DNA of 64,000 bases from Hydrolagus colliei (Eukaryota): the NCBI GenBank assembly GCA_035084275.1, contig CM068769.1, positions 2,232,001-2,296,000 on the forward strand, written 5' to 3'. The translations under genes were made by a program, and so were the position numbers. Each line of letters starts with the position of its first letter. The first letter of the stretch is position 1. Of this stretch, positions 11,803-54,168 are shown piece by piece. The notes beneath the pieces are model-generated. The model was not told where the DNA came from. It was given only the letters and a program-made list of their open reading frames with translations, and did no database searches.

Positions 11803-11854
11803 ATACAAGGACCAATAAAATTGAAATGAGCAAAGCAAAGTGTTTACTCTCGAT
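11803..11854 (-). pseudogene. Orphan leader exon of the V2/V5 family, V exon missing
   Basis: Aligns with the V2 leader and upstream promoter region. ATG is ATC and the donor GT is GG. The intron remnant runs into the AACGTT element. Confidence 0.75.
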
Positions 11855-13718
11855 GTGTCGAAGCGATGTATCAATTGATTCGATGGGAGCAGTTGAGATG
11901 ATTTGTTGTGTCGGATAGGTGCCTGGAAGCAGAGTGGGGAACAAAGTTGAATACAGCAGCGATAGATACGCCTCTGTATCAGATGACAGTAGTTTCAAAC
12001 CCCACCACCGGATTTGTGAACTGTTTGATAAGGTGACGAACCAACCCATTGGGACGTACAACTAGCAATCTAAATTGCTTAGTTTTGTTCTAACGCAATG
12101 CTGGCAGTTTAGTGCATTTTGCAATGCTATAGCTTTGTAGTTAGAATAGTCAGATAACAAGCGAGACGCAAATTAGTGCATTTTAATTACTTTTTTGGTG
12201 GAACATTTTGCTAATAATAGCAACAATAATAATCTTTTTTTATATTAATAGTATAAAACCATAATCATAATCCTAGTATGATGATTATTTTAATAATCAT
12301 TCTATTTTTATTATTGTTTTTTTTTAAAGATTATGATTTAGCGTGTTTGCGGAGTAAGGAAATTTACTCAAACTTTCGCTCTGATCTGCCTGTATTCGAA
12401 CACATGTCTCAAAGTTGTAAGGCAAGTGCTCTAACCACCGAGATACAGCAGCTCTACTATTTCAGAATGGAACTTGATTGGTTATGTTAGACCCAACTCA
12501 TGTAATGTGTGTCTTTAGTGCGCCATATGCTGGTAGATTAGATCTACAATGTCTTTCCAATTGTAGACATTTGATAGCAAACTTGTTTGAACCGTCCTAA
12601 TATTTGACTGCGATGTGCACTACATTTTTAAACACAATTGATAGACAGGTGAGTGTGACAGCATTCCCCAGAAACCATAATCGGTGAGGTTTTGTATGTG
12701 ATCGAGTAAGTATTACATGTAATAATAATCGTTGGGTTTCAGAATTTGCCATATCACAATTTTAAGTCGCTTTGAAGAGATTTTGAACAGGAGAATGTTA
12801 TTGAATTAATTTCATATTGTGTGGGCGAAAAACGGTAGAAAATGTAGGTCAACAGTGTCCTCATTCGCTTAGTGACCAATTTATTATTATTTTCAGCAAT
12901 CACTTATTATTAATTTATCGTGTCTTATAGCTCATTCCATAGAGCACACGCATTTGAGGCAAGAAAATTGACTTCACTTCTAGACAAGGGGAAAGGTTTG
13001 TGAAGTTTCCTTACCTCACACACCTAATACTATTAATCCCTTGTAAATAACTGCAATAAAGTGGTCGTTTCAATCCACGAGCGTTTGTGCCAGTTTTGCC
13101 TTGTTCAAATGGTTGCCGCGTTTCCCCCACAAAATATAACATCAATTCACTTTGTATGTTTATAAAGCAGTTTCAGGCGCTTAAAAGACATGAAGAAAGG
13201 TATATCGATGCAAGGATTATTACTAGTAGAGTCGTAGTAAAGTGAAGCAGTTAGGCGGAAGGAATGAGCCAAGGGAATTCCAGAATCAGTCTACGATTCA
13301 GTGACCATTTTTTGTGGGAAAATCATTATTTGGAAATACTTACTACTCGGAGTAAAGAGATGCACCAGTCGATCATCAACCCAAATCCTACTTACTGCTA
13401 GTTATATATCGGTGTGTTTAGTAAGAAAACTTGCCTAAGGTTTTGCCATGTCCAGCCCAGGAATCAAACGCTTGTCTCTCTTTTGTGAGACGAGTGATCT
13501 AACCCACTGAGGTTTTTGTTTCCGCAGTTCATCTCATGAGCAAATGATCAAAGACTTGTCTTGTCTTGAGTGCTGGTCGCTGCTGCTGGTGACTTTTATT
13601 TTTGCTTCATACTACAGTATTAAGCTACAGGGTCATCGAAAGAATGCATAGCAAAGAATGTAACTGACACAGGGCAAGGCAGTATTTGTACGATGCTGCC
13701 GTGCAATCTGTCACTGTG

Positions 13719-15013
13719 GTGAGAGTGTAGCACAGTAGTACACAGCGCTGTCAGACACCTGCAGATCGGAAACGGTTAAACTGGTGGATGTATTTGATTT
13801 GTATATCTCAGCAGATAATAGATTGCCAAACCACGTGCCTTTGACTGGATTATCATTGCCAGTAGAGTATCTCCGAACTTTAAACTCCGACTGGCTGTGT
13901 GAGTAATGCCTATACCAGTATAGATAGTAATTGGCTCCAATATTTGGATACGTAAAATCTACAGTTGCATTTTCTCCTTCTTTCTGAACCAACGCCGCAG
14001 CTTTGTAACTGACAGTGTCGCCAGCCTAGAGTTCTGTAATAGAAAAAGAAGAGTAGGTCCATACATTATCCACTATTCGCCTGAATTAGCTTTTCCTGAG
14101 CTTGGGAAATTATCTCGACTTTACCGGTATTATGAATAAGTCATTTGTTAAAAATACAATGATAATAGTTATTGAATTATAGACAGAACGTGATTAATTC
14201 GTTGTTGTTGTCCGAATTTGCTGCACAGAACCTGCTATCAAGCGAATTACAAAGTGTTATTGTGGACGATACAACACAGCCAAACATGCCCAGCAGTGGT
14301 TCACACACAACCGTGATTGCGTAGCAATCTAAATAAGAACAATAATCCTTGCATTTGATACCGCGCTTGTCACGCCCTCTAGACCTCACAATGCGCTTCA
14401 CTTAATATACTGCAAAGTGAATTGAATGTACATTATTGGGCGAAACGCGGCATGAGTTTGCGCACAAACAGTGTCCCCGAAAATATTCGTGATTGAAATG
14501 ACCAAACTATTTTCTTGCGTGATTTTGTTGGGGACGGATTATTGATAGGCGTATGGAGTAGAGACACTAGCCTAATGTTTCGCCTTGACAGACTTAGATT
14601 CGAACACATGTCTCACTCTTGTAACTCAAGACCCCTAATCACTCGGCTACTTTTATTATATTTTTCGTTATATTATTATCGAAACTTTTCGTTTCATTGT
14701 GTACGTTCCTCCACAAACTTAGCTACAAATCCACTGAAAAGGGTTTGAGTGGATAATATATTACCATTTCTATTTTAGTCCGGCAAATGAAAGAAGAGTA
14801 GTCCTAATTACCGCAGGTAAACCTGCCAAATGTTACCACCTGCCCAGAAATTAATCTCAGTTTATATCACGTGTGAGTCAAGGACAGATATCAATTGGAT
14901 AAAGGCCTCCGGCAACTGTTAATGTGCAGGTGGCAATCGGTAGCAAAAATATATCAACCCAACACGACCTCACCTGAAATAAGGTTTGCCAGTCAGGTAG
15001 TCAATAACCCCAT
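13719..15013 (-). pseudogene. TRAV/TRDV: TCR V pseudogene V3 (V1-related)
   Basis: Leader 14974-15013 contains TGA. V exon 13719-14033 has TAG at codon 3 and first Cys changed to Phe. RSS 13681-13718: CACAGTG-22-ACAAATACT. Confidence 0.85.
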
Positions 15014-16089
15014 TGTTGTTCTCCAGCCTCTATGGATATGTCTACGGCCTCAGCTGGCTCATATCCCACAATGCTTGTCGTCACTGGCAGAGACCATATT
15101 CTCACGACACCTGATTGACGTCACAGAACCGTTACAAGAAACAACGAACAATTGGATTGATACAGAGCCAATCGCTGCAGGAGGGAAACCTTCCACTCTA
15201 ATCCAGTTAACAACACAAACAAAGCCCTAATGTGCAGGCTGGTCATTTTATTAACACCATAACAATCTTTCCATTTCTGATAGCGCTATTTTCGTCGTCG
15301 ATATATCACAATGTGCAACAGAGTGAGTTAAGTAGAGTTCACAGAATCATAGATTCATACAATTATACGGCACAAAAGGAGGCCATTCTAGTAGTCTAGT
15401 AGGTGCCGTCTCTTTGAACAGAGCAACTGAATCCGACTGCCCAGCTCTCTCCCCATAACACACCTGCTCTTCCTAATTAATGATCTAATTCCCTTTGAAA
15501 AGCTGTTATGGAACCTGCCTCCACCACCTTTTTAGGCAATGCATTCCAGATTCGAACAACCCGCTGAGAGAACAAAAAATTCTCCTCAGCTCTCCTCTTC
15601 CTCAAGCCCGGTGACGTCCGCCCGACGTGAAAGTCGCTTTATGAATCTACTTCTGTTGTTGTTTACTCAATATTTTGTGAGTGAATCACAAGACCAATTA
15701 TGCACAGCCCTGTCCGGTGAACGATCGTGGATTGACCGATGGCCAACGAATGATCTATTTATTATCATTGTTTTTTGAAAGAATTATTCAAACGTAAATG
15801 CCTTTCCACCTATCGACAGGTAAACATACTTCCGTAGAGTATGGAAACTTGCCTAGTATTTCACTACCGTGGAAATCGAACCCACGTCTCTCATTTGCGA
15901 GACAATTCCTTTTGTCCCCGCTACTGTTGCGTGAGTGGTTGAGCTTCGCTGCCTCCATGGGATCATCGAGGTGTTTGTTTGACTGAAAGATCATACGACA
16001 ATGTAATTCACACTTGCTGTCGTTGTCTCCTTTCATAAAAAGGCACGCGCTGCAGCAATCTACCAAGAAACTATTAGAAACATACTGGA

Positions 16090-16490
16090 CACAGTGATTT
16101 TGTGTTGCAGTTTCTGTTTGTTTCGCAGCACGAACTTCTCTCTCCTCAAACCATTAACCGTTGCCTTCAATCCTCCGTTTCTGTTCTCCTCCTTGTCCCC
16201 CGACTCCACCGCTCCACCATCGTCGGCCGAGGCTTCATTCAATGCGCCTCGAAGCTGTGGAAATCGCTGTGATTCGCCCCACTCTCTTTCCAGTTTCAGG
16301 TTTCAGCTGAAGACCATTCTTTTCGACCGCGCATTCGATCAACTTTCTCCACCTGCCTTGGATCGGGCCCGGTATCAGTTATTGCAAAGCGCTCTGAGGA
16401 CGCTTTAGATAGCGCCCCCAGCGCGGAGGACGCTTTGGAAATCGAAGTTACTGTTGTTGATACTTGTAACAGGAAGCGGCTTTTATAGCA
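16090..16490. mobile_element. L2-type 3' fragments in opposite orientations
   Basis: Similar to the 3' UTR/tail of the 32-35 kb L2 (ttcaggtttcagctgaagaccattcttttcgaccg; gacgctttagatagcgc). Confidence 0.5.
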
Positions 16491-17828
16491 GCCAAAGAAG
16501 TCAGTTACAGAAAGCAACGTTGGCAACTTAAGTCAGTTGTTGTGATCGTACCATTGCTGCGTCATCTGCTGGTGGACTATAGCTACAACAAGTCTATAAT
16601 TGGTGACATTTCTGTTGAATTTTACCATTCCTGTTGAAGAATGAACATTGTGTTTTTTTAGAAAAAAAAAATTTCGTCTTATTTAAAAACATGTGCGTAT
16701 AACGGGACACCCGGGAATCACTATGTTATTTACTTGACAGAAACAATATTGTGTGTTATAGCATTAATAATCCCGCATATCAAATCATTCAGTTACTCAA
16801 GGTTTATTTCAAGTGGGCTGAAATCGCTTTCAGAAGAATGTATTAACAATGAATTGACTTCGGCACTTCAGAATTCCATGGGTTTGAGTGAATCATTCGA
16901 CGTTTTTGTAGTAATAATGTTAAAGATGCATTATTAGTTTTGAAGCGTGTATTGTCCCAGTAAACTGATATGCCAAGCGACTACCAAGTTAGTTGTTTGG
17001 TTTTAGAACAGAGGCGTGTGTATTAACGAAAGAATGCTTTGCTCTTCCATGACTGAACCAAAGTACTCTCATTTGCAAGGCAATCACTAATCACTGAGAC
17101 AACGGCCTCAGGAGTTGGGTCTCTCGACGGCACAAACGCTGATGTGCTGCCAAATATGCAACAGTATTGAGAAAGTTTTGCATCATTGTGCACTATACGT
17201 GATATCAGGTGAAGTGTAAGTGAATGTATTTTTTAGGCAATTGCACAGCGAATTCACGTGCAATGTAGTACATTGAGTCGTCTGGCAGCCGTGATAAGGT
17301 TCTGTGTCAAATAAAAGAATAATTATTATTATTAATTCCACTCTTTCTCGACTTGAACCACTCTATCAATTCTTCAGCTTGTGGTTGTAAATCAGACACG
17401 TATTGCCACTGAGACACAGCGGCAGAGTGAACAGATTGTCGAACAGGTCAAAAGTCAGTCCAGGCCTCTGTACTGAGATTAAACCATTTTTCTCCTTTTT
17501 GCAGGTTAATGTAAAATGGGGCAGGCTGACAGCAGTCTGATTGTAACATGGCTTGTGTGATCGCTTGGTAACACATGGTTGCGTTAGAAGCAGCCAAAGT
17601 GACAGACAATCTCCTCAGATTGTAACGTATAATGATGTGAGACTTTAGCTGACAAGCTGATGGGAGGGGAATGTGGTTTCCTCTGAGTTTGTCTGCTGAA
17701 GTGTCTGCTCCCCGCAGGGCCTCAAGACCTGACCAATATTCCGCTCAAATTTCAAACAGACGGATCGACCCTATGTATAAAATGAAGACAGTTTTTGTAC
17801 GAGCCCTGAAGGGTAGTCAACCACAGTG

Positions 17829-18627
17829 GAGAGACTAAAGGCACAGTAATACACTGCGCTGTCAGAAAGCAGCAACACAGAGATGGATAAATTGATGGAA
17901 AAACTAAATGTCTGTAGTTGAGCTGTGAAGCGGTTTCCAAATCCTGTGCCTTTGACTGGATTGCCACCCGTAGAATATGTCCGGACTATAAACTCTGGAT
18001 GTTTGTCTGGGTAATGTCTGTACCAGAAGAGATAGTATCTTTTTGCAGTGGTGGAGTATGTGCAAACCATATCGACAGTATCTCCTTCGTTCTTAACCAT
18101 CGTGGCAGCTTCCTGACTCACAGAATCGGCGTCACAGAGTTCTGTAATAAACGATGGAAAGCACAGCTAAACATTCATAGAATTAAAGAATCTTACGGCA
18201 CAAACGGAGGCCATTCCGCCCATCGAGTCTGTGCCGGCTCATTGAACAGAACAATTCAATCCAACTCCCCAGCTCTCTCTCCCCATAACTGTGCAAAACT
18301 TTACTCCACAAATAAACATGTACATCTCTTTTAAAAGATACTTTTGCATCGCCCCCCCTACCGCACCCCACCAGTTCAGACAATGCATTCCAGATCCGAA
18401 AAACACGATGAATGAAAAAACGTTTCCTAAACTCCCCTCTAATTCTTTTAGAAATTATTAATTCATCTGAATGTCGAACTGATTGCTCAGTCCACTCAGA
18501 TACAGATCTCCCTCCAACAATCGTTGTTGAAATGGAGCTGACAATCAGCAGCGAAACTGAGTTAGCTCAACGCGACCTCACCTGCCGTAAAGGTTCCCAG
18601 CACTAGACAGACAGCAAACAGCCTCAT
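17829..18627 (-). CDS. TRAV/TRDV: TCR V segment V4, apparently intact (paralogue of V1)
   Basis: Leader 18582-18627. V exon 17829-18141 with both Cys, WYRHYP and YYCAFS. RSS 17790-17828: CACTGTG-23-ACAAAAACT. Confidence 0.93.
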
Positions 18628-19488
18628 TGCTGCTCCTCAGCCTTCGCTGTTGTGTCTGTGACATCGGTTTGCTGGGAACCAACATCAATATGCGTCACTG
18701 GCATATCCCGCAGTCCCTCGTCACCTCATTGACATCTCAATTGCTTTTATATTGTTCATTACTCCATTACTTTCTGTGTTAGTGTGGCGGTGGTGGGTGG
18801 GGTCGTGGGCGTGTGGGAGGTGGGTAGCAGGGAATCCTCCCACTCAGTTCATGGTAACCTTACAATCAAACCTTACAAATGTACAGTCAATTCGCTTAAC
18901 AGTATATATTCCGTGAAGCGCTTTGAGACGTGGATAATCTGTGAAAAGCGCTATCTTGGCTTAATAATCAAATGCAAGTATTCTTCTTATTATTCTAATC
19001 CAATAAATGACTGTCATGAACATCGGATTAGTTTACGTATACACAAATGGATATAGCGTTTTTAATTTCACTCCAAGCAATATTTTCTATTAACTCAAAC
19101 ACTTCCTCCATCTTATAGCTCAATGGCGGTTATCACTTTTATTTAGATTTGTAAAAGTTGTAAAATTACATTTTCATCAATTCGAAGATCTTCATGTATC
19201 TCCAGTGTTGATTCGTGAATTACTTATTTCCTGAAAGATCATTGATTTATTAATAATTATTTCCTTTGTTATAGTTTGTTTAAATAATTCACTACACGAA
19301 GCCATGTGACTTGCTGTAGCACTTGGTTTATTGCATGCGGTTGCGAATTAATCACGTGGATCTTCTGAGTGTCACAGCAGTAAAGTATAAAAGGTCAACT
19401 GAAACGAATGACTTCTGTGCAGTGATTAAACCTTTAACTCCTCTTTGTATGTTTATGTACGGTGGTGTAGCCTGAAGGTAACACTGTG

Positions 19489-19937
19489 CGAGTGACGCCA
19501 CAATACTATGTGTCTGAATCCGATAGAGTCGCAGCCAGCACAGTTACAGTGGATGTCTCGCTGCTGGTGTCCAAACTAGTGGTGAAAAGATCTTTAGCAA
19601 ATTGAGCTCTGAAAGTGTCCCCATCATGATCGCGTCTCAGGGTGTACAGAGGAGGCGGGCCTGGATACTGACGGTACCAGTATATCCAAACTCTCGTGAA
19701 ACCAGCAGAGTAGGTTCATCTCAGGGTCACAGCCTGGCTTTCACTGACAGACACTTCCCTCTGTGATGGTTCAACATTATCTCCTTTCGCTGTCGCTGTA
19801 GCCAGAGAGAACAAGTTATTCACTGTAACGCACACAACAGAGGTAAATCTCCAAACCGTGCTCAGAACGAGAGTAAATTATTTACATAAAAGCACCAAAA
19901 ACATTAAAATGATCAAAGCAATGTGTTTACTCTCCAT
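19489..19937 (-). pseudogene. TRAV/TRDV: TCR V pseudogene V5 (paralogue of V2)
   Basis: Leader 19886-19937. V exon 19489-19795 has TGA at the first Cys and TAG in the YYC motif. RSS 19450-19488: CACAGTG-23-ACATAAACA. Confidence 0.9.
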
Positions 19938-20789
19938 GTTTCCAAGCGAGGAAGTAATTCGATGGGATCTTTTCGAGAAGAGAGACTGTGTCCTGAATTG
20001 TGAATCAAAGCAGAGAGAGGAGCAGTGTGGACCACTGCACTAATGGATACGCCTCTATGTCAGATGACAACAGTTTCGAACCCCACCACCGGATTTGTGA
20101 AACCTAACTAGTCAGATGACGCTCCAACGCCTTGTGACGTAGAAACAACAATGGAAATTTCTTCTTGTATAATTTTTCTACTCTCCTTTATCCTTCCTTG
20201 ATCAGTAACCCCGTGCTCTTGTCTCTATCCAACTGTACGTCGCCTTGGGACGTTCTCTCGACGTGAAAGTCGCTATATATATATATGTAAGTTTAAATTG
20301 TTTGATTTACTATATCGTGAAGCCCTATAGATCATTGGTTAAAAGCATCATATCACAAGCGAGACCCAAGGTGGTGTAATTAACATATTTGATGGAAACC
20401 TTGTGGTACTAATAAATATTATCCTTGCGTTTGAAATGGCGCTTTTCATGACGTGTCGACGCACAAAAGCGCATCATACAATACAAGTGAATTGACTGTA
20501 TACTTTTGGGCGAAACGCTGCAGCCAATTGCGAAAAACAGCGTCCCACAGAAACAGTCGAGCATGGAAATGGATAATTTTATTATTGCATTATCTTTGGT
20601 AGGATTACTATTATCCGTCTGGAGTAATGAAACTTGCCCAAGGTTTCTCACGCACCTACCTGGATTCAATCAATCAATGAATCAATCAAAACTTCCATTT
20701 CTATAGATCATTTGACGTCAAGAGTACGTCGCAAGGCACTGTACAGTTAGGTATGGACAAGAGTAGTGGGGGCGAGATCGGGGCAGGAT

Positions 20790-21200
20790 GAAGAACGTTA
20801 GGAAAGTTGCCTGTATATTTGTGGGCGAAACGCGTCATGCAAATTGCGCACATCAGCGTTCCAGAAACAGTAATAGAATTGGGACGAAGTGAAATGTGTC
20901 AGAAATATGGAAAGAGGAGGTGACGGTTTATGGGGCTGGGGGGAACGAGAGTAGGAAAACCGACGGTGGGTGAAACGCAGCAACTAATTGCGCAAATATT
21001 TTCCCGCAAACAGTCGCGGAAGCAAGTGGGAGAAAGGGTTCAAAGAGGGAATGGAAGGAGAGAGAGGGAAAGCTGGGGTGTGGAACGCTCCGGGTGGACG
21101 AGTGGGGAGAACAAGGGAGTAAGGGATAGTGGGATCGAAAGTTTGGTGTGTGACAAGATCAGGGAGAATCTGGGATAAGAGAGAAGAGGATGGGACTAGG
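20790..21200 (-). mobile_element. L2/SINE fragments
   Basis: Purine-rich reverse L2 3' sequence plus the SINE core (tgtgggcgaaacgcgtcatgcaaattgcgcac). Confidence 0.5.
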
Positions 21201-21451
21201 AAAACAGGGGAGAACACAGGTCTCACACTTGTAAGGCGAGTCCTACAAACATTGAGTTCCACAATAGCGTTTGTGAGAGAAAGGCAATGAAATACATCAA
21301 GTGCAGATTGCATTTTGATCAGCAAAAGCGTCGTGATAGAAGCAATTTCAACTGTAACAGGAATCACCTGTGAGAGCTGCCAATGACGTTAGTTACGGAA
21401 AAGCACATGGCAGTTATATCAGTTGCAGCTGATGTTGTATGTATGTTTAAT

Positions 21452-21465
21452 GCGCCAACTGGTGG
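21452..21465 (-). promoter_or_regulatory. CTCF-type motif CCACCAGTTGGCGC (representative of a co-oriented set)
   Basis: Matches CCASYAGRKGGCRS closely. Homologous sites at 12520-12533, 16559-16572, 29991-30004, 41180-41193 and 48917-48930, plus an independent site at 54092-54105. Confidence 0.65.
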
Positions 21466-22369
21466 TGATAAGCAGCTACAGCAGGTTTCCAATGGAGACA
21501 TTTGAAAGCAACTTGTTTCAGGACTGTCTTGAACTCTCTCGTGATTTCTCCTCCCGTTGAATGATACACATTCCTCTCGTTCGCGGATTCTTCCTTGTGT
21601 TTTCCTAGGTTTACTAGAAAATTTGACTCGTATTTAATCCACAAACTCTTGGCGTATTCGCGCTCACAATTGCGCCATCCAACCACCCACTCCGCCACCG
21701 CCCATCCACCCACCACACCCACCAACCCACCAATTATGTTAATTATTTGACTATTTCCTGTAACAGGTTATATTACGTGACTGAACATTGAGTTCACATT
21801 GGTCATGTTACAGAGTCGCAACAATCAGTTTACATGTATAAAGAATCTTTCCCATTGGGAGGAGTTCCAAAGGCACTTTATTCTCCAAGCAAATTATTTA
21901 TTATACAGTACTACCGAAATAAACAAACTATTTGCATTATTCTGTTTTACATCACGACTAAAATTTGTGTTCTCCCTTTCCTGCATCGCCGAATGGTAGC
22001 ATCGTGTGTTTAGTGTGGACTTTGAATCAAGGCGTTACTTGAACCAGTTATAGGTGGGCAACGTGAACTGAGTTAGTCAGTACTCCATGCCTCATTCGCA
22101 GAATATTCCGAATCTCATATTTTGGACAGAAGACAAAACAGGGAACTGCTTCAGGATTATGTTCATGTTACATCTTTAGCTACAACCAGTCTTCAAGCGA
22201 TGCATGTTTTTTGTCACTGTGAATAACACTGGGACCTAAGCTTTGCAAATTTCCGACTACATTCATCTCTCTTCCCCCCTCCGCCACCCCCTCAATTACC
22301 TCTCCTCACATTCGCTCTAAAAATCGTTCTAAACGACAATTCCTCCTGTCACCAGACTGTTCTGGAACA

Positions 22370-37230: not shown

Positions 37231-37280
<50 letters not shown>

Positions 37281-39115: not shown

Positions 39116-39165
39116 GGATCTAAACAATAAGCAAATTTCTGCACCTGAGGAAGCTCCAGCTTAGA

Positions 39166-43046: not shown

Positions 43047-44718
43047 TGCTATCTGTATTTAATGGCATGCGTTGCAGTGAGAGAGTTAATCGTGTAGTTG
43101 GAGAATGTTATTTGGGAGTCAGAAAGATGCAGTGAGGAGGGATGAACAGTGAATGACATATAGAAGTTCCCATATACGTTGCGGAAGCTTGTCTGAGGTA
43201 TACTTATAACAACGTTTATTTACGTCTCTCAGCGTCATTTGTTCTGCTCTGCCCTCTGTCTCATCCATTGGTTCTCCATCAACCCTGACATGTCTTTGAT
43301 CAATCAGGTGCCTCAAACATGCAGCAACCTACACCCAAAATACAATTTCAATTCGTCCAAACACATACATGTTATTCAATTATCTGTTCTGTCTGTGCAT
43401 TCCTGTAGCTTAATGGTATCAACACTCACCACAACATTTAGAACAACAACAACTTCGATTTATATAGCGCACTACACGCCGCACGGCGTCTCAGAGCGCT
43501 TCACGTTGCCCCACAAGCAACGTGCCTGTGTTTGATCCAAGTAGGGCGAAATGTTGCATACGTTTTACTACTCTACCCACCCACTTCTGTTTACTTATTA
43601 AGAAGTAGCAGTTAATTTATACATCAATCTAGCTGGTTGGTTTCCTGTGTTAAGTACCCTGATAGAATATGTAATTGAATCCACCACTGTTTGTGTGACT
43701 TTGCTGTGCACAACTGGCTGCCTGGTTTCGCCTGCAAATCGCCGAATCACTACATTTTAGAGTGTAGTCTATCAGGCGATCAGTGACGTCACAAGGCAGG
43801 CCGAGGTATTCAGTGGAAGCCACTGAGTATATACAGAGGGCTAGACACTGGCCCATTGTGTGTTGGCTTCACATTCCCTGGGGCAGCTGGCAATTGGATA
43901 TCGAAGTGAAACCAGCCATTGAGAGGATTTCAAAGCGAAAGAGGAGAAGCCCACGTGTCGTCAACATTTTCTCAGATATCTCTGCCCCAGTTGGGTGGAG
44001 GTTTCCTTCCTGCCTTGTTTCCGCTCCAGTCTTCTGGGTTACAGGAGTTTAGGCAATAAACTCACACTTTTCTAGCAGAGATCATGCTTGCAAGATATGT
44101 GCTGTGCATTTTATTTCACTGAACTAGGCTTCATATAAAGACAAACAGATTTGTAAACCGTGTGTCTGAAACATTGTGAGATCCACCGAAATATTTGTGA
44201 GATTCTACATGAAGCTGTTCGTCGGAATAACCCTTCATTGTGATAAGTCGCCGTATCATGTCTTCACAACTTCTCTAAACGCTTCACTTGTTATACTGTA
44301 AAGTGTAGCATTAGTGTATTGTGTGGCAGAGAACTGCACATAGCATCGTCTCACAAAAAATGGTGGATCGAGGCAAAAACATTTGTTTAATGGATTACTA
44401 CACTCTCGAAGGCTATCCACCAAATGACTGTCAACCGCGATCCAATTTACTGCTCGGCAGAGTAAGATTAATAAGATTAATAATACTTGCATTTGATATA
44501 ACACCTTATCAATTCTATGAGAAATTACAAAGCGCTTAGTTTGTTGTGCAGTGAAGTGAGGTAACTATATGTTACCGGCTGTATGTGACAGCCAATTTCA
44601 TACAGCAGTCTTCCACAAACGCTCATGGATCGCAAAGGCGAGTGGAATATCCACTGAGCTATAGTAACATACAGCAGCATGTTTTTGTACAGGCTCCACT
44701 TAGACACGCAGCACTGTG

Positions 44719-45153
44719 CTCTCTGCTGCACAGAAGTAAGTGGCGGTGTCTGCAACTCGCACGTCTCTGATTGTCAGTGTGCTGTTCATCTCTTTTCTAT
44801 CAGCCAAAGCACTTATCCTCTCCTCCGTCTTCATCTCTCTGCTTCCCTTCACCAGCAAATGGATGGAGCCGTTTCCATTCTGTTTGTACCATTGGAAGTA
44901 AGGATCTTCCATAGTAGTTCGGCACTCTAGAGATACATTTCCATTTTCGTTCTCTGTCAGTGCCCGAGCACTCTGTGATACTTCACTATCAGCCAAGGTA
45001 CCTGGGGAATACAAATGAACATTCTTGGAAAGAAATACGGAAAACGTCTGGAACTAACTTGTCATTAGTTACTAGGGTAACAAGAATGCTATTGTCCAAA
45101 CTCACACTCTACTTACAGAAGAGCGAAATCATGAAACTAAAAATAATACACAT
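44719..45153 (-). CDS. TRAV/TRDV: TCR V segment V11, intact with canonical heptamer
   Basis: Leader 45117-45153 (MCIIFSFMISLF). V exon 44719-45001 (SLEC...WYKQ...DTATYFCAAES). RSS 44680-44718: CACAGTG-23-ACAAAAACA. Confidence 0.93.
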
Positions 45154-46009
45154 TGGTTTGTAAATTGGCTTCATTTTCAATCCTCGTCGATTCATGTCAG
45201 AATCTCCAGGTGAAATGCAGATAGACACTAGTTAACTGTTGATGAACGTTCATGAATGTTTGTCGTTTGCCGCCAACTGTGTTGCTCATATCTATTTTCC
45301 TGGCGAGGCCTCCACTGACGTCTCATTTCCTGTATGTTTACTTGTTTGACATTCTTTCCCCAATGCATTACCAGTAGCGTTCATTTTGCCCACCAGGTAG
45401 GAGGTCACTGGATATTACAGTAGATTATTTCAATCGCGTTGAATCATCTCAATGATCGAATCAATTACAACAACAACAACCTGGATTCATATAGCGCCCT
45501 TCATGCCGGATAGCGTCTCGTCCAACTTCTATACTTTTAATGTAGGCAAATGTAGCTTTTATTGTCAGCAATTTTATTATAAGTTTTTAAGGGAAATGCT
45601 CTATCGGAAGACATGTGCCTGCAAACATTAGTTCTGTTTAGAAATCAAGTCAGTATCAATTCAATTGATGGAAGCGTCTCAAAAGTCCACCCAAATACTT
45701 CTCTCGATGGCAAGTCTGTGTGTTTGGCAACCTCAACAGCCAATTCATATACAGCAATATTCCCTCAATCTGTGAAGTGAACAAAAAAATTATCCTGATG
45801 GAATGTCTGTCCAGTCAACAGGACAAACCCTGTTCTTGCTCTCGCAAGAACATGGGTTATTTCTCTAAATTTGTAGAAACCGACTGGACGTCTGTTGAAT
45901 CGTTCAACAGAAGGACACCTTCGCTGACATTCTAGACACTTCCCCCGGCCTGCACTGGAGTGTCAGCCCAGTACAATAGTGAGGAATCAAATATTTCATA
46001 CAAAAGCAA

Positions 46010-46420
46010 AATTATATTTGTATATCGCCTTTCACGTGAGGAGGACTTCCCAAGTGTCTGGACAGTTGTTGATTCAGACCCGAGCTAAGGACGGTTGGGG
46101 AGTGCGTGTGGAAGGATATGCTGATGGTTCCATCGAAAAGAAGTGTCTTGAGGCGAGACTTGAAGGAGGCTAAGGAGTGGATGAGTCGGAGGGAATGCGG
46201 GATGGAGTTCCAGATGTTGCGGGACAGAGTGGCTGAAGGCTCGCCCGCCAAAGTTTGGGCGGGTGGGTCGAAGTACATGGAGCAGGCTAGAGCCTGTTGA
46301 ATGGAGGAGGTGGGCAGCTTGTTACGTGGATAGTAGATCACGGCTATCTGTTGGGGTGAGGTTCTGAAGGGCTTTAAATGTGAGAACCAGGATCTTGATT
46401 CGGAGACACATTCCGAATAT
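46010..46420 (-). mobile_element. L2-type LINE 3' fragment
   Basis: Encodes WNSIPHSLRLIHSLASFKSRLKTLLF. Absent from block A. Confidence 0.75.
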
Positions 46421-47023
46421 GTAAGTTGCTTTGAACGTATTAAGTAGTAGATCAATTATAAATGATTCTTGATTGTTATTATATGGTTCTCCAAGATGTT
46501 TTTAAAATACATCATTAGAATTGATCAAGCGACATGATTCACCTGTCCCATAGCGCTTCATTGTAATGTGTCGTGACAGTGACAGTGTGTGTCCCAGTGG
46601 AGGTGACAAAATACCTGGCAGGCCATTGAGCACAGCAGTGTCCCACAAATATGCGTGGATAGAGAGATTGCATTTATATTATTCTGATTGTTTGACGTTT
46701 TATTGTACTAGGGAAAGCGATCCACCCATGGACTAACAATCAGGTTCCGAGTAACTGCTAGTTGAAGAGTTATGTGCGTCCAGAGTATGGAAAACTGCCT
46801 AAGGATTCCCAACGCCTGGGAGTCAAACCCAGGTCCACTAGTGAGCAAAACGAATACTCCAACCTCTGCACTACAGGTCTCCACAGACACTGTACACCGC
46901 CCTCTCTGTTATAATAGTGTAGCCACCTCAGTGTGTTGGCAGCACCAAGTTGAATGTGTGAGAAAAAGTCACGATTGTCTGCTGAGTTTTTGTACAGTGT
47001 GTCTGGCCTCTTGTCACAGTGTG

Positions 47024-47895
47024 GGCTCCAGGGCACAGTAATACATGGCTCCGTCACGCACAACAGACCTGAGTATTTGCAAGTTAAATGTTTTATTCTC
47101 CTTGTCCAGCTCTGCGTTGAAACGTTCAGGAAGGCTAGGAGATTTGTCTACCTTTCCAGAGGCATATATCCTGAGCAAGTACTGAACATCTCCACCGGGA
47201 TATTGCCTGTACCAGAAGGCAGTGATCATTGTGGAATAACTGCAGTTTAGTGTCATGTTTTCGCTTTCAAGTTCCATTATCTCAGGAGGATATTGGGTGA
47301 CTACATCTTTCCCGGTAACGTCTGCAATAATAAAATAACACATTTTCTAAGCGAAGCTAAAGATTAATTTGCACTTGGAATAATACTAATTATTATTAAA
47401 CTTGTATTCGCGAATTGTCACAAAATTAGGACGCTACAAGTTACAAACAAAACACCAACAGAATAAAATATAAAATGAGTTGTTGCCAAACTGTGTAGGC
47501 GAAACGCGGCAGCCAATTTTAAACAGCAGCGTCCTACAGGTAGTAGTGGAGTAGTCCGCAAATTATAGTTAATATAAGTACTGTTTTGATGGCATTGTTT
47601 TAACTGCAAAGCGATCCGCCTTCTAATAACTGCTAAACTCACAACGGCGTTTGTTTGGTTTAAAGCAACTTGTCCAACCACTAGCCCTGCCGTGATTCAA
47701 GATAAGGTGTGCTCTTTTTCAAAGTGAGTACAGTACTCTAAATACTACACTTCCATTATTATTTAAGAATAATATAGGTATTTGATAGAGTGCTTTTCAC
47801 ATCTTATAATACCAAATAATATGCACTAGGCCTGTCCACACATACTTACTGGCTATGGTGAGGATTGCTATCAGTAACTGACAGTGACCTGTCAT
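47024..47895 (-). CDS. TRAV/TRDV: TCR V segment V12, intact (paralogue of V8)
   Basis: Leader 47850-47895. V exon 47024-47321 (LNC...WYRQYP...MYYCALEP). RSS 46985-47023: CACACTG-23-ACAAAAACT. Confidence 0.93.
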
Positions 47896-49931
47896 TCTGG
47901 CTGCTGAGGTGACGACAGATAGTGGAAACTCTTCCTTTGTATATGTCTATTCGATGCTTCAGTGAAATGTAGTGAGGCAGCGACTGATCTGCTGTATGCA
48001 GGCAGTGAGTTATTCCATAAAATTGTAGGCGTTTCACACTAACCAGAGTATCTTGGCCTTAACCGGTTGCTGATTGGCTACAGGCGGACCGTGGTTAGAA
48101 TGGGGGGAATAGATGCATGCTTCACCCACGCACAAAAGTTTACAGTCTATAATCAAGACTGAGCTGACAAACTGCCTCTTTTGCTGGTACTATATCTAAT
48201 GAATCAGAAAGTTTTGGTTCAGACATCACGTTGTTGCACTGAGATGATGCTTCGACTGCAATTCAAATTGATGACTGTGTCAGGGCGGTATTGTCAACAA
48301 AACTTAGATAGAGCCAACGATCGCTTCACGTATATTCGTGGGAGAATTACTGTGTTCAAATTACCTATTGTATTTCTCTTCAAAATTCCGTCACGTATTC
48401 TCACACTAACTCACATTAAACGCTTCGTTAGCATCTCTTGTATGAAGGCATGTTATAAAATGCAAGGATTCTTCTAATTATTATCCAAAGCAGGACGGCC
48501 CGAACTCAGAAATATCACGAGTTCTTTAAATCAAAAATAAAATTAAACTGAACAATGTTATTCTCCATTTCCAAATTAACCAAAGAGAGTGCCCCTGTAG
48601 CCCTTGAGAAAGCGTAACATGTTTAACACCACAGGGAGAGCCACTCAATGGAGCCTGATTAGTTTTTTGGGGACACAAATAGAAAAAGTAGTAAGATAGG
48701 AAAGATGTGACATCAAGTGATTCTGGAACAACAATATCATTAATTATGTTTTAGCTCAACAAACATAAGCACTTTTCAGCTGTAGTGGTAAGAGTGTATA
48801 TGAGGCAACACATCAACTGTAACAGGAAGCACCTGCTCACAAGGAAGTTAGTTACAGATAGGAACGAGGCTATTTATGTCAGTTGCAGCTCATGACAGAT
48901 ACTGTATGTGCTTAATGCGCCGACTGCCGATGCATTAAATCATTGCATTTGATATAGCGCTTGCCACATCTTAGTAACGTCCCAAAGCGCTTCACAGAAT
49001 ATACTGTAAAACGAACTGACTGTATATGTTTGTGGGCGAATCGATGCAGCCAATTGCACATAGCAGTGTCCCACACACAGTCGTGGATTGAAATGACCGA
49101 CTTTATAGTTGTGTTTCTTGGAGGGATTATTATTATGCGTGTGGAGTAAGGAAACTTGCCCACGATTTCGCCCTGACTCACCTGGATTCGAACACATGTC
49201 TCCCCAGCTTGGTTTCCCCAGCTTGCAAGACAAGTGCTCTAACCACTGGGCTACAGGAGATCCAAATTTCAGGTTCAGAACGTGTACAATTGGAAACATT
49301 TCACAGTAAATGGTTTCCAGCCACGCTCAACATTCCGTTTCTGAATGGCGCTGTATAAACGCAAAATATTGATTTAATTACTTTTTTTTAGATGTTTTGC
49401 AATCGACTCGAAATACACAGAAAGACTTGTATATGGTTAAGGTTTCCTCAAAAGCGGAATATTGAGGCTTTGTCTGTGACAATACCGTATTTAATAAAAA
49501 ACTATCTATATTCCTTTGATATATATTTGCCTTTTATATATAACCATATCATATCTTAGAGGTTCAACATAGCGCTTTATCGAATGCAATGTTAACGCTT
49601 TGAAATCTTATTGTGTGGGAGAAACGCGGAAGCCAAGTTTGCACATCAGATATCGATTGGATTGAATGAACAATTTATTAATATTATCAATATTCTGAAG
49701 GAATTCTTACGCCCGGAATAGCGAATCACTAATCTGCTAACAACATAGTTCCGAATTACTGCCATCTAAACAGCTACATATGTATGGAGTAAGAAAACTT
49801 GCCCCATATTTCGCTCAGCCGTGAATTCAAACCCTTATATCTTACCTGTGAGGCGAGTGTTGTAACCACTGAGCTATAGGACTCCACACGGTAGTTTTTG
49901 TACGACGATACCACTGATCTCTGTCTCTGTG

Positions 49932-50761
49932 GAGCTCAGTGCACAGTAATACACCGCCGAGTCTGTGACTCTAACTTGGGATATATTTAAAGGGACGGTT
50001 CTCCCCACTTGATCCACTGTTGATGAGAAATGTCCTTTCGCAAAGTCTGCACATTTTGGTCTGTTGCTGGTGGATGTCCTGAGGATATATTCTGGAGAAG
50101 AGTTGGGATAGAGACGGTACCAGAATAGGTAATATATGTTGTTGCTTGTAGCTGTATAATTACACTGCAATATTGCATTCTCCCCTTGATCAGCTGTCAC
50201 AGTAGATTGGAGTTGTGTCACAGCGTCTCCTTCGCAAAATTCTAGAAATAATATAAATGAATAATAATAATGTAAATAACGATAATCACAAAAATATTGA
50301 TGTTAGTAATCTTTTCATTGGCTACAACGCCTTAGCCTGTATCCGCGACAGCATGAAGCGCGTCACAGAATATTAATTAAGCACATTTTCTGGGCAAAAC
50401 GTCAGAAACAATTGCGCGTATCAGTTTCCCCAAAACACTAGTTAATCGATTGATATATATACGATTACATTTTTGGAATTCAATGCTTAGGTGACGCGAT
50501 CAGTAAGTTTATCTACAGTAGGGTTCCTATTTAAGACTAGTGAAACGCGGTCGTGTGTGTGCCGGAAGTAAACTTGACTGTAGATTCGCCTCCCTACACA
50601 CTCAGATACAGGACGTGACCGCGTTTCAAGCCCTGCAGTTTATTGGTTATCTCGTGCAATAAGAAAACAAACTCATAGGATAATACGTGCAGGCACATAT
50701 TGATCTAAGTTTGCGGCTTACCTTCGAATATAACGATGGCTGCTGCCAGGTAAATATACAT
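49932..50761 (-). CDS. TRAV/TRDV: TCR V segment V13, intact (paralogue of V9)
   Basis: Leader 50722-50761. V exon 49932-50241 (YYCALSS). RSS 49893-49931: CACAGAG-23-ACAAAAACT. Confidence 0.93.
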
Positions 50762-51931
50762 TGTGATATGTGTGTTTAGTGACATGTGGTGTTGAGGGAG
50801 AGTTGATGGTGGAGTTCCACATCGTTGGCTGGGCGGCAATTAGATGCGGTGTTGGTGGTTGAACAAGATATGGCATTCAGAATTTACTGAGTAGGTCTGA
50901 AGGTTATTCACAACACTTATATCTCTGTCAATTTGCATCATTCACTTTGTTCTGCCATCCTGCTCCCTCATTGGATCTCTTCCATCAATATGGTCAAGAG
51001 CTGAAACGGATCATTGTGAGGGTTCAGAGCCAATGGGCAGGAGACACGTTACATCACCATCTTCTCAGATGTCTCTGCCCTAGTTACTTGCAAGTTTCCT
51101 TCCTGCCCTAGTTCCTCGCCAGCCTTCTGGATGCAGCCGTTTTCGTATAAAACGCACGTATTTTGTAGCACAATTGATCGCCCAAATTTGGTTTGTTTCG
51201 CTGAATTGCATTACGTATTTTACTAACCAGTATGTAAACATGTGAAGAACACATCCCATGCTTGTAAGTGTACGAATCAAAATTTGACTAACAATAAATA
51301 TTATCGTTTGAAGTAGCATCATATCACAGCTGCAAAACATCTCTAATCTTTTCACAAGAAGAACTGCCAAGGGTTGCGATCATGTATTTTCTCTATAAAA
51401 TACACGGCAGCCAATTGCACACAGACTTGTCTAGCAAACCGTAATGGAGAATCATCCATTTTGTTATTGGAGTGCTGACCCAGGAAAGGCTATCGGCCAG
51501 TCGTGTAGCAGCCGGTTTCCTACATAATGCTCTGCATTAGTGTAATAATAATCCTTGCATTCAAAATTGTGACTGATTCTTTATTCAGAGTTCTGCTGTG
51601 AAGTGAATTGAACTGATATGTTGGGCTAATTGCAGCAGGCAATGTGTGCAGAGCAGCGTCTCACAAACAGTCGTGGATTGACGTGAATATTTGTATTTTT
51701 CAAATGTATTATGACCATCAGGAAAGTGATCCCTCAATGAATGGCGAAACAAATACCTATAAACAACTACTATTAGCAAAGGCGTGTGGAATAAGGATAA
51801 TCGCCCAATATTTCGTCCAGCCAAGCATCGAAACCCAGCTCTACTTGTTTGCGAGATGAGTTATGTATAGTATAACTACATGGACCTCATCCTGTTTTTG
51901 TACAGGCTCCTCTGAGACACGCAGCACTGTG

Positions 51932-52385
51932 CTCGTTGCACAGAAGTAAGTGGCAGTGTCTGTCATTCGCACATCTTTGATTGATAGTATGCTGTTTTTC
52001 TCGTTTGTGTTAGCCAAGGCACTTATCCTCGGCCCTTCCTTCATCTCTCTGGTTCCCATCACTAAGTACTGGATGGAGCCATTTCCATATTGTTTGTACC
52101 AATGAAAATATAGGACAGAACCAATGGACCTGCAATTCATAGATGCATTTCCATTTTCATTCTCTGTCAGTGCCTGAGGATTCTGTGACACTTCGCTTTC
52201 AGCCAAGATATCTGGGGATTAGAAATGAACAATCCTTGAAAGAAATGAGAATATTATCTCCAAATTTAATTTGTAATTATTCATCAGTGAAATTAGAAGG
52301 TCTTATGTTCAAACAAATAAACCCACTTACACAAAAATAATAAGAAGAAATTAAAAACAGCGTATGTTGCAGTGAAATTCTGCAT
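51932..52385 (-). CDS. TRAV/TRDV: TCR V segment V14, intact with canonical heptamer (V11 family)
   Basis: Leader 52331-52385 (MQNFTATYAVFNFFLLFL). V exon 51932-52211 (YFCATS). RSS 51893-51931: CACAGTG-23-ACAAAAACA. Confidence 0.92.
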
Positions 52386-54168
52386 GATTCTCAATCGGCG
52401 TTGACTCACGATGACGTGATAGTTCGAAATGCAACGATAAATGTGCTGCAACTCAGCACCTCGATTATAGCCTTTTATTCATTTCAGGAGTCGACAATGA
52501 GCCCTGCGTCATTACCTTGTCCCTGTTCATTGCTGGAGACGTTTTGCGACTCCCCCTATCGCTTTCCGTTGTGGTTAGAGTAACTCCGCTAACCTTGCCC
52601 CCCCCCCCCCCCCCCCCCCTTGCCTCATCCCCTTGCCACGTTGAAAGCACATCTCAGAACCTTCCTATTCGACTGGACCATTGGTAAATAAACTGTTCTC
52701 CCAGCCCTCCTTCCTCCCCAAAGTGACAAACAACTCTTGCCCAAATACCAGAATGTTAAGCAACTTTTGTTTCATATTGTAAAGGGATTCATTTGAATCA
52801 GCAGAAATGTCCTGTTTAAATGAAATGTCAACTTAGGTCTAATTTTGATTTAGGACTTTTTGTTTTTAACAAACGTGTGTTTTGTTTTGCCTTTCACAAC
52901 TGTTTCCCAGAAACAGAAACGAATAAATTGAACTGAAAAGTTATATCTGTTTCATCATCTTTTCTGTCAAAGTGACAATAGGTGTTTACCAAACACCTGA
53001 TGGACAGAAACCGCCTCTATTTGAAGTTTCGCCTTGGGACGTCGCCGGTGACATAAAAATCGCTCAATAAATGCAACGTTGTTGTTGTTTGATGATGTCG
53101 TACCAAACAAGAAGGCATATCCAAATAAATAGGCCCGTTATTGAGAATAACTTGGGGGGATTATATTAAATTCTATGAGTTCCAATTCATTAATCAGTGT
53201 TTGAACTCAGTATCATCTGACTCAGAGGCAAATGCACTGTAAATAGAGCATGACTGACTACATCAATGAAATACACTCTCCTTCAAGTTAAATTATCCTT
53301 AACTCAGTGTACACAGATTAGCATTATTCTGACTACCTGCCACCAGTATTAGAGAAAGGATTCCTGAAACATCGAGTGAAAGAGCATCTGTAGAAATATC
53401 TAATTACAAAGACTAAATGTTCGATAAAGACCGTGACAATGGGAATACGTGCATTGGATTGTTCGCATTATCATGTCTTCTGGGGGACTCGAAGCGCTTC
53501 ACTGATTATTTTCTAAGATGAATTTCCCATATATCTTGAGGGCGAAATCTGCAAGACGATTGTGCATATCAGTCTACCACAAACATTATAATTGGATGAA
53601 AGTCCCCTTTGCTCTTCATATTTATTATTTTTGAAATAATTGTTCCCACAGAAAAGCGATTCAGCAATTCAATAACAATTAGTTTCCTATTTATTGCAGT
53701 TGTAATTAGGGAGTCAGTGATTTAATATTAGGAGGTCAGCCTTTTCGCACAGAAGGACATGTTTCTTCACTCATATGGTAGTAATGAGTGAAGGTAGAAT
53801 TCCATAAATTCACTCATAAGATAGTGAATTTATGGCTTCTCGACGCCCCCAAAAGCTGCAGACGTTCGGTAGTTGAACATATTGCAAGACAGAAATTGAC
53901 AGATTTGCTATGGATAGAGGGATTAAGAGATGAAGGGATTAGGCAGGGGCAGTTTGAGTTAGATTAGAAGATAAATTATAAACTTTTTGAATGGCGGAAC
54001 AGGCTGGAGGTGTCAAATGGCCTGCTCCTGCTTGTTATTCTTATGTTCTTGTACATATAGAAACGCTTATTAATTTTTTCTTGCAGCAATGATGCCCCCT
54101 CGCGGTTTAGCAACAAATTAAACAGTTGATGTTTTTGTACGGAGCCCCCATAACACATCAACAGTGTG

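What the first reader, a model, noticed from the sequence alone, without database searches (positions are those of the whole stretch)
12520..54105. Co-oriented CTCF-type motifs in a dispersed conserved module throughout the V cluster
Seen: minus-strand motifs CCAGCATATGGCGC (12520-12533), CCAGCAGATGACGC (16559-16572), CCACCAGTTGGCGC (21452-21465), CCGGCAGATGGCGC (29991-30004), CCACCAGGTGGCGA (41180-41193) and a SINE-disrupted copy (48917-48930). All point toward low coordinates, i.e. toward the presumed D/J/C end. Five carry TGTAG/TGTAC exactly 10 nt upstream of the core. They sit in a homologous module of about 150-200 bp, typically with aactgtaacaggaa...gttgcagct on one side and ttggagacattt on the other, found next to different V families. 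Known: mammalian Igh and Tcra/d V regions carry CTCF elements oriented toward the recombination centre that shape cohesin loop extrusion and RAG scanning. Inference: the same architecture may exist in a cartilaginous-fish TCR locus and be propagated as a duplicated module.
Basis: partly seen in the sequence, partly recalled or inferred. Interest (0 to 1): 0.78.

Follow-up and report, generated by a model that had tools for sequence, protein, structure and literature searches.

The report
Conserved CTCF-site module behind TCR V genes
A roughly 170-base non-coding block carrying a good two-part CTCF binding motif sits 0.6-1.2 kb behind six T-cell-receptor V segments of a chimaera and has been kept while the DNA around it decayed, so the loop-anchor layout known from mouse antigen-receptor loci probably exists in cartilaginous fish too, although binding is untested.

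Summary
Observation confirmed. All six motifs are at the stated coordinates on the minus strand. Five have TGTAG/TGTAC exactly 10 nt upstream of the core, and the sixth is split by a ~325-bp SINE-like insertion.

A profile of the module finds exactly six copies in 64 kb. All are co-oriented with the 15 minus-strand V segments and lie 3' of the RSS of V families A and B. Five cores are the only window matches to CCASYAGRKGGCRS at one mismatch or fewer (0.64 expected).

Between old cassette lineages only the V exon, the leader region and this module still align. A-versus-B modules are 58-66% identical, against 47-51% for the V exons.

Caveats:
- Co-orientation follows from tandem duplication. 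There are only four old lineages, or one to two origins.
- The module has other equally conserved blocks, including an ETS/E-box-like one.
- Recent duplicates show no clear constraint.
- The J/C end is not in view.

First readers noted similar co-oriented motifs in at least eight other windows of this ~2-Mb array; none of these was checked.

Verdict: probable V-linked CTCF element, a new member of a known kind.

The parts
12416..12582 (-). Module copy A1, core 12520-12533. Weak: T at core position 10, poor upstream motif, 3' half replaced by a SINE-like repeat. Lies 1147 nt 3' of the RSS of V13711, which has Cys23 replaced by Phe.
16461..16612 (-). Module copy A2, core 16559-16572, PWM score 16.4. 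Lies 1217 nt 3' of the RSS of V17771, which has an intact ORF.
21348..21512 (-). Module copy B1a, core 21452-21465, PWM score 13.9, upstream motif TGCTGTAGC. Lies about 2.55 kb 3' of the RSS of V24007, or about 1.15 kb without a 1.4-kb insertion at about 22450-23850.
29899..30052 (-). Module copy B2a, core 29991-30004, PWM score 17.0, upstream motif TTCTGTACC. Lies about 614 nt 3' of the RSS of V30562.
41076..41240 (-). Module copy B1b, core 41180-41193, the best PWM score in the window (19.2). Lies about 1136 nt 3' of the RSS of V42188, a pseudogene with two in-frame stops. A LINE abuts its low-coordinate side.
48812..49310 (-). Module copy B2b, split by a ~325-bp SINE-like insertion (48941-49265) between the upstream motif and the core. 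Core remnant 48917-48930 has decayed (PWM -1.1). Lies 3' of V49874.
54090..54108 (-). Separate CTCF-like site, not homologous to the module (PWM 12.0; 13 of 14 to the H19-type consensus CCGCGNGGNGGCAG). It starts 21 nt after the RSS nonamer of pseudogene V54238 and is co-oriented with that V.
   Evidence: PMC6746451 for the consensus and for the mouse RSS-associated class
785..55947 (-). Array of 15 V exons, all on the minus strand, with 23-bp-spacer RSSs where one could be read. V-exon ORFs start at 785, 2476, 13711, 17771, 24007, 26231, 28095, 30562, 42188, 44700, 47014, 49874, 51841, 54238 and 55639.

Best explanation
The module is a conserved cis-regulatory block that belongs to the V cassette of two TCR alpha/delta V families. 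It was copied with those cassettes by tandem duplication.

Its centre is a two-part CTCF binding site: an upstream motif, a 9-nt spacer and a 14-15-bp core, read on the V sense strand.

Proposed mechanism (inferred, not shown):
- Bound CTCF would have zinc fingers 9-11 on the V side and its N-terminus on the side away from the V. That is the side where J/C is expected.
- Cohesin extruding chromatin from a recombination centre would then stall 0.6-1.2 kb short of the V's RSS. This could hold that V near the centre or insulate neighbouring cassettes.
- This is the role proposed or shown for V-region CTCF elements in mouse Igh, Tcrb and Tcra/d.
- Other conserved blocks in the module (an AAATGTC..CCAATTG block and an ETS/E-box-like block) probably bind further factors. 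The unit may therefore also act as a local accessibility or enhancer element.

Shown here: motif quality, spacing, conservation pattern, position and strand.
Inferred: CTCF occupancy, cohesin stalling, any effect on recombination, and the position of J/C.
For: 1. Motif.
- Five cores match CCASYAGRKGGCRS with one mismatch each. They are the only such matches in the window.
- Their PWM scores are 11.8-19.2, and four of them are the four best in the window.

2. Upstream motif.
- TGCTGTAGC (B1), TTCTGTACC (B2) and TGTTGTAGC (A2) match the published CTGCAGTTCC / CAGCTGTTCC motif.
- Each is followed by 9 nt before CCA. The published spacing is 5-6 bp plus TGG, or about 7-10 bp (PMC12885311, PMC9004084).
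- This spacing has no indel in any of the five intact copies, although the module has indels elsewhere.

3. Substitution pattern.
- Variation in the core falls mainly at matrix positions 7 and 11, the degenerate ones.
- If the 19-mer is mutated at the rate of the rest of the module, the simulated mean score is 6.3 against 15.7 observed (P about 0.003).

4. Conserved island.
- Between lineages B1 and B2, and between A and B, only the V exon, the leader region and the module align.
- A-versus-B modules are 58-66% identical. The V exons are 47-51% identical and their synonymous sites are saturated.
- Invariant columns are clustered: 22 runs against 39 expected.

5. The copy split by a SINE between upstream motif and core has lost the core consensus.

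6. There are no transposon hallmarks, and every copy is linked to a V.

7. A second, non-homologous CTCF-like site lies 21 nt after another V's RSS nonamer on the same strand. This resembles the mouse RSS-associated class at 17-19 bp (PMC6746451).

8. Literature.
- The two-part CTCF motif is shared from lamprey to human (PMC5504073).
- Loop-extrusion signatures have been reported in a skate (bioRxiv 10.64898/2026.10.19.759930).
- Mouse V-region sites point to D-J-C (PMC5859386).
Against: - There are no occupancy, accessibility or contact data.
- The copies are paralogues, so there are only four old lineages and one or two origins.
- The core is only marginally better conserved than the rest of the module: 11% versus 21% mismatch to consensus, P = 0.06. 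Mismatches do not track matrix information content significantly.
- In the two recent duplicate pairs the module diverged about as fast as synonymous sites: K about 0.22 against dS 0.20-0.23.
- Module divergence is almost star-like (A-B 0.53, B1-B2 0.40). This would also fit a later spread by conversion or transposition.
- Every core has one non-consensus base, and 12520 has a severe one.
- The best core sits behind a dead V (42188). Nine of the 15 Vs have no module.
- All five cores also fit CANNTG, with T fixed at a position where CTCF equally accepts G.
- J/C is not in the window, and earlier notes do not place it.
Confidence: 0.55

Rival explanations
1. The module is a V-linked enhancer, promoter or accessibility element read mainly by other factors. 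Candidates are an ETS plus E-protein pair at the AACAGGAAGCACCTG block, an unknown factor at AAATGTC..CCAATTG, and a bHLH or YY1-type factor at the core. On this reading the CTCF resemblance is secondary or coincidental.
For: - The longest invariant run among three lineages is TTCCTGTTACA in the ETS-like block, not the CTCF core.
- The AAATGTC/CCAATTG block is as conserved as the core.
- All five cores keep CANNTG with an invariant T.
- Conserved ~200-bp enhancers directly 3' of VH8 RSSs (V8E), and PAIR repeats that bind Pax5, E2A, YY1 and CTCF, are known in mouse Igh (PMC10390877).
Against: - The central E-box dinucleotide differs between copies (TA, GA, GT, GA, GG), so no single bHLH dimer fits. 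The conserved CC..CA and GGCGC flanks lie outside an E-box.
- The YY1 core ATGGCG is intact in only 2 of 5 copies.
- The E-box of the ETS/E-box block is kept in only 3 of 5 copies, and that block is absent from 12520.
- A 14-mer CTCF match plus an upstream motif at the right spacing inside about 170 bp is unlikely by chance, roughly 0.002 each by my estimate.
- This rival is partly compatible with the best explanation.
Confidence: 0.2
2. The module is a relic without function. It would be a fragment of an old mobile element, or plain cassette DNA, carried along by V-cassette duplication or spread by gene conversion, and it happens to contain a CTCF-like word.
For: - Recent duplicate pairs show module divergence equal to synonymous divergence.
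- Divergence between lineages is nearly star-like.
- Many vertebrate CTCF sites derive from retrotransposons (stated in PMC5504073).
- The window is full of SINE and LINE copies.
- Genome-wide copy number could not be measured.
Against: - There are only six copies in 64 kb, against about 30 for the local SINE. All lie in the same place and strand relative to a V.
- No terminal inverted repeats, tRNA-like head or tail.
- Flanking cassette DNA of the same age no longer aligns.
- Invariant positions are clustered in blocks rather than spread evenly.
- The motif score is kept well above what random substitution would leave.
- Four independent insertions into the 0.5-1.3-kb zone behind Vs, all in one orientation, would have a chance of the order of 1e-4 by my estimate.
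Confidence: 0.12
3. The module encodes a small structured RNA, for example a hairpin formed by CTGTAAC and GTTACAG in its 3' half.
For: The 3' half contains the short inverted words CTGTAAC and GTTACAG.
Against: - RNAalifold gives only 5 pairs, -2.5 kcal/mol and no compensatory change.
- No Rfam family reaches its gathering score anywhere in the window.
Confidence: 0.02

Closest known systems
V-region CTCF-binding elements of mouse and human Igh, and of mouse Tcrb and Tcra/d
   Same: - CTCF consensus sites are scattered through a V array on the V sense strand and point to the D-J-C side.
- Mouse VH: more than 98% in one orientation. Mouse Tcra/d: 129 of 144 (PMC6746451, PMC5859386).
- Presence is specific to V families and can be predicted from the V tree.
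- Both an RSS-adjacent class and a class 0.8 kb or more from the RSS exist. This window shows one candidate of the first class (54090) and six of the second.
   Different: - The sites here are in a holocephalan TCR alpha/delta-type array.
- The sites here are 0.6-1.2 kb 3' of the RSS. Mouse non-RSS sites are mostly described relative to the next leader.
- The site is embedded in a ~170-bp conserved multi-block module.
- Nothing is known here about binding, loops or V usage.
PAIR repeats and V8E elements of the distal mouse Igh V region (PMC10390877)
   Same: - Repeated, conserved non-coding elements tied to one V family.
- V8E is a ~200-bp conserved block 3' of the VH8 RSS.
- PAIR repeats (470 bp, 14 copies) bind CTCF together with E2A, Pax5 and YY1.
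- They act as local enhancers of V recombination within loop extrusion.
   Different: - No sequence homology to the module.
- V8E lies immediately after the RSS. PAIR has a promoter and a lncRNA.
- Here only motif-level hints of ETS or E-box partners exist, and transcription could not be examined.
CTCF sites spread by retrotransposons (for example SINE B2 in rodents)
   Same: A CTCF motif carried in a repeated unit and multiplied within a genome.
   Different: - Here the unit multiplies with the V cassette by tandem or segmental duplication.
- No SINE or LINE hallmarks were found.
- The local SINE family lacks the motif, and in one copy a SINE insertion destroys the site.

Membership tests
CTCF-binding element | Core motif CCASYAGRKGGCRS (zinc fingers 3-7) | tested here: met
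   Five copies have 13 of 14 matches and are the only such matches in the window. Their PWM scores are 11.8-19.2. The sixth copy has decayed.
CTCF-binding element | Optional upstream motif CTGCAGTTCC-like, 5-6 bp plus TGG (about 7-10 bp) before the core | tested here: met
   Against TGCWGTNCC (8 specified positions), the B1 and B2 copies match 7 of 8 and A2 matches 6 of 8. The spacer is 9 nt in all five intact copies (PMC12885311, PMC9004084). The match is weak in 12520.
CTCF-binding element | CTCF occupancy in vivo or binding in vitro | not testable with these tools
   No ChIP, CUT&Tag or EMSA data are available.
CTCF-binding element | Cohesin co-occupancy or a loop anchor convergent with a partner site | not testable with these tools
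   No plus-strand site scoring 11 or more is in the window, and J/C is not in view.
V-region CBEs of antigen-receptor loci | Located among V segments, in a fixed relation to them and specific to V families | tested here: met
   All six copies lie 3' of the RSS of family A or B Vs. Ancestral distances are about 0.6 kb (B2) and about 1.15-1.2 kb (B1, A). Families C-F have none.
V-region CBEs of antigen-receptor loci | Uniform orientation toward D-J-C | tested here: inconclusive
   All sites read on the V sense strand, but the copies are paralogues and the position of J/C is inferred from V orientation only. One non-homologous site (54090) agrees.
V-region CBEs of antigen-receptor loci | Influence on V usage or locus contraction | not testable with these tools
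   Needs repertoire, Hi-C or deletion data.
PAIR / V8E-type V-family regulatory repeats | Conserved non-coding repeat tied to a V family | tested here: met
   The module is the only non-coding island still alignable between old cassette lineages.
PAIR / V8E-type V-family regulatory repeats | Open or active chromatin, lineage factors bound, lncRNA | not testable with these tools
   Only motif-level hints: an ETS-like CTTCCTGT in 4 of 5 copies and an adjacent E-box in 3 of 5. No RNA or ATAC data were reachable.
Transposon-borne CTCF site | Motif lies inside a recognisable mobile element (tRNA head, TIRs, target-site duplication, tail) | tested here: not met
   No consistent inverted repeats, no head or tail, and no match to the abundant local SINE.
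Transposon-borne CTCF site | Many dispersed copies genome-wide, not linked to one gene type | not testable with these tools
   Only the 64-kb window is readable, and within it all six copies are V-linked.

The most novel reading that the evidence does not exclude
The module and the RSS-adjacent site would be two classes of CTCF anchors used throughout this ~2-Mb holocephalan TCR alpha/delta V array. Together with partner factors they would steer cohesin-driven RAG scanning. That would place CTCF-guided V(D)J scanning, including the 'RSS plus two helical turns' class known from mouse VH genes, at or before the common ancestor of jawed vertebrates.
Probability: 0.3. Interest if true: 0.7.

Novelty: new member of a known kind. 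Interest (0 to 1): 0.5.

Why it matters
CTCF elements in V arrays are central to current models of how RAG scans megabase loci, but those models rest on mouse and human data. My searches found no paper on CTCF sites in cartilaginous-fish antigen-receptor loci.

A conserved, family-specific, correctly oriented two-part CTCF site behind V segments of a chimaera gives concrete elements to test: five cores, one natural knock-out by a SINE, and one RSS-adjacent site. These can address whether loop-extrusion control of V(D)J recombination is as old as translocon-type TCR loci.

It is an expected result rather than a surprising one, and for now it rests on sequence alone.

Tried and rejected
- Structured-RNA reading: no consensus fold and no covariation; no Rfam hit in the window.
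- MITE or TIR element: no consistent inverted repeats around three copies.
- Part of the abundant local SINE: that SINE has about 30 look-alikes in the window, while the module has six and does not overlap them.
- YY1 site: the ATGGCG core is intact in only 2 of 5 copies.
- Single bHLH site: the central E-box dinucleotide is not conserved.
- Extra or degenerate copies behind V families C-F: none at nhmmer --max, E up to 10.
- Link between V integrity and motif quality: none. The best core is behind a dead V (42188) and a weak core is behind a Cys23-less V.
- Cross-species check:
  - The closest database Vs are Callorhinchus proteins at 62-71% identity, with no retrievable DNA.
  - Two bamboo-shark loci (L001, L002) have no module homologue. 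They show one strong co-oriented motif that lies in a lineage-specific segment, which is too little to count.
- Similarity look-up in earlier findings by sequence: blank.
Full report
**Setting**

The window holds 15 V exons, all on the minus strand, with 23-bp-spacer RSSs at their low-coordinate ends where an RSS could be read.
- Earlier notes of this scan place the window at the 5' edge of a chimaera TCR alpha/delta-type V array.
- The closest database proteins are Callorhinchus V domains at 62-71% identity.
- By sequence the Vs fall into six families, which I call A to F.
- The order from high to low coordinates is C, F, C, B, D, C, B, (LINE block), B, D, C, B, A, A, (hAT), E, A.
- About half look dead. 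Examples: stops in V42188 and V54238, Cys23 lost in V13711 and V2476, Cys104 lost in V28095, heptamer deleted in V26231.

**Observation**

TGTAG or TGTAC lies exactly 10 nt 5' of the core in the five intact copies.
- The copies are homologous over about 150-200 bp.
- A profile built from them finds exactly six copies, all on the minus strand, and nothing else in 64 kb.
- The sixth copy is split between upstream motif and core by a ~325-bp repeat (48941-49265). That repeat has about 30 look-alikes in the window.
- Each module lies 3' of the RSS of a family A or B V. Distances are 1147 and 1217 nt (A), about 1136 nt (B1), about 614 nt (B2), about 2.55 kb at V24007 because of a 1.4-kb insertion, and about 960 nt at V49874 because of the SINE.

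**Is it more than chance?**

- The consensus CCASYAGRKGGCRS, as quoted in PMC6746451, has five matches at one mismatch or fewer. All are module cores and all are on the minus strand. Expected 0.64; 0 of 100 shuffles reach five.
These include the window's four best scores. The expected count at 16.4 or above is 0.16-0.32.
- The copies are paralogues, so these are not five independent events. The fair statement is that one ancestral ~170-bp block contained a near-consensus CTCF site (chance about 0.002 by my estimate) and that four old lineages have kept it.

**The upstream motif**

- Published descriptions give a CTGCAGTTCC / CAGCTGTTCC-like motif bound by zinc fingers 9-11. It lies most often 5 or 6 bp before the 19-bp core motif that starts with TGG, which means a spacer of about 7-10 bp to CCA (PMC12885311, PMC9004084).
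- The modules read TGCTGTAGC (both B1 copies), TTCTGTACC (B2) and TGTTGTAGC (A2), each followed by 9 nt and then CCA.
- The spacing has no indel in any intact copy, although the module has several indels elsewhere. This fits one protein touching both parts.

**Conservation**

V-exon trees and module identities agree on two recent pairs (B24007/B42188 and B30562/B49874), on a B1-B2 split and on an older A-B split. The module therefore travelled with the cassette.
- Between B1 and B2, and between A and B, blastn at word size 7 aligns only the V exon, the leader or upstream region, the module, and SINE copies.
- A-versus-B V exons are 47-51% identical, with saturated synonymous sites and dN of 0.71. 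A-versus-B modules are 58-66% identical, K about 0.53.
- Invariant columns are clustered into blocks. There are 22 runs against 39 expected over four lineages, and none of 20,000 permutations gave as few. Over three lineages and the whole module the figures are 53 against 68, P = 0.006.
- Within the core, variation sits mainly at matrix positions 7 and 11, which CTCF tolerates.
- If the 19-mer is mutated at the already reduced rate of the rest of the module, the simulated mean score is 6.3 against 15.7 observed, P about 0.003.
- The SINE-split copy differs from its intact paralogue at 5 of 19 positions, including high-information ones, and scores -1.1.

**Weaknesses**

- The core is only marginally better conserved than the rest of the module: 11% versus 21% mismatch, P = 0.06.
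- In the two recent pairs the module diverged as fast as synonymous sites: K 0.22-0.23 against dS 0.20-0.23. One member of each pair is damaged or sits behind a dead V.
- Divergences between lineages are nearly star-like. Later spread by conversion or transposition is therefore not excluded.
- All five cores also fit CANNTG.
- Other blocks are as conserved as the core: AAATGTC..CCAATTG about 30-45 nt 5' of it, CATGAGCTGCAAC, and CTTCCTGTTACAG. On the plus strand the last reads like an ETS site next to an E-box. The module is more than a CTCF site.
- Nine of the 15 Vs have no module, and motif quality does not track V integrity.

**Rivals**

- RNA structure: rejected.
- Transposon hallmarks: absent. 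The module is not part of the local SINE.
- YY1 fits 2 of 5 copies, and a single bHLH specificity fits at most 3 of 5.
- A functionless relic is hard to reconcile with the island pattern, the blocky invariance and the exclusive V linkage.

**A second class of site**

A non-homologous CTCF-like site lies at 54090-54108 on the minus strand. It scores 12.0 and matches 13 of 14 positions of CCGCGNGGNGGCAG.
- It begins 21 nt after the RSS nonamer of pseudogene V54238.
- Mouse proximal VH genes carry CTCF sites at a fixed 17-19 bp after the nonamer (PMC6746451).
- By my estimate about 0.02 such hits are expected by chance within 100 nt behind the 15 RSSs. It is a single case.

**Orientation**

- The motif reads 5' upstream motif, spacer, core 3' on the V sense strand. 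The N-terminal, cohesin-facing side of bound CTCF (PMC12885311) would therefore face low coordinates, where J/C should lie if these Vs rearrange by deletion.
- Mouse Igh and Tcrb V-region sites all point that way, and 129 of 144 do in Tcra/d (PMC5859386).
- Here the position of J/C is an inference; earlier notes do not locate it.

**Comparison and novelty**

- The nearest known systems are V-region CBEs of mammalian antigen-receptor loci and the PAIR/V8E regulatory repeats of mouse Igh (PMC10390877).
- The two-part CTCF motif is shared from lamprey to human (PMC5504073). Loop-extrusion signatures are reported for a skate (bioRxiv 10.64898/2026.10.19.759930).
- I found no paper on CTCF sites in cartilaginous-fish antigen-receptor loci.
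- First readers of this scan noted co-oriented CTCF-like motifs in at least eight other windows over about 2 Mb of the same array. These are unchecked leads, not evidence.

**Verdict**

- It is a new member of a known kind, and function is untested.

Noticed in passing
window 54090-54108 (-): CTCF-like site beginning 21 nt after the RSS nonamer of pseudogene V54238 and co-oriented with it. Its position resembles the mouse RSS-associated VH CTCF sites. It is not homologous to the module.
   Followed up: partly
window about 49660-49890, 30510-30580, 13295-13530, 42290-42330 (-): A SINE-like repeat with a tRNA-type head starts within about 10-20 nt of the RSS nonamer in several V cassettes of families A, B and C. 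It seems to be an old part of the cassette.
   Followed up: partly
window 26281-26299 vs 44714-44732 (-): V26231 has lost the RSS heptamer through a small deletion relative to its paralogue V44700. The deletion by chance creates a moderate CTCF matrix hit (12.3) inside the V end.
   Followed up: partly
window 22450-23850: A 1.4-kb insertion between V24007 and its module, absent from the paralogous V42188 cassette. It has strong negative GC skew, and its nature was not determined.
   Followed up: no
window 32450-34520 and 39190-40840 (+): LINE-type reverse-transcriptase ORFs fill the gap between the B30562 and B42188 cassettes. The 3' end of one abuts the low-coordinate side of module 41180.
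   Followed up: no
window, all V exons: About half of the 15 Vs look non-functional: stops in V42188 and V54238, Cys23 lost in V13711 and V2476, Cys104 lost in V28095, heptamer lost in V26231, and only a partial ORF at V55639.
   Followed up: partly
L002:14655-14673 (+), Chiloscyllium punctatum BEZZ01003299.1: A very strong CTCF matrix hit (22.1), co-oriented with and about 1.85 kb 3' of a TRAV-like V. It lies in a ~4-kb segment absent from the paralogous locus L001.
   Followed up: partly
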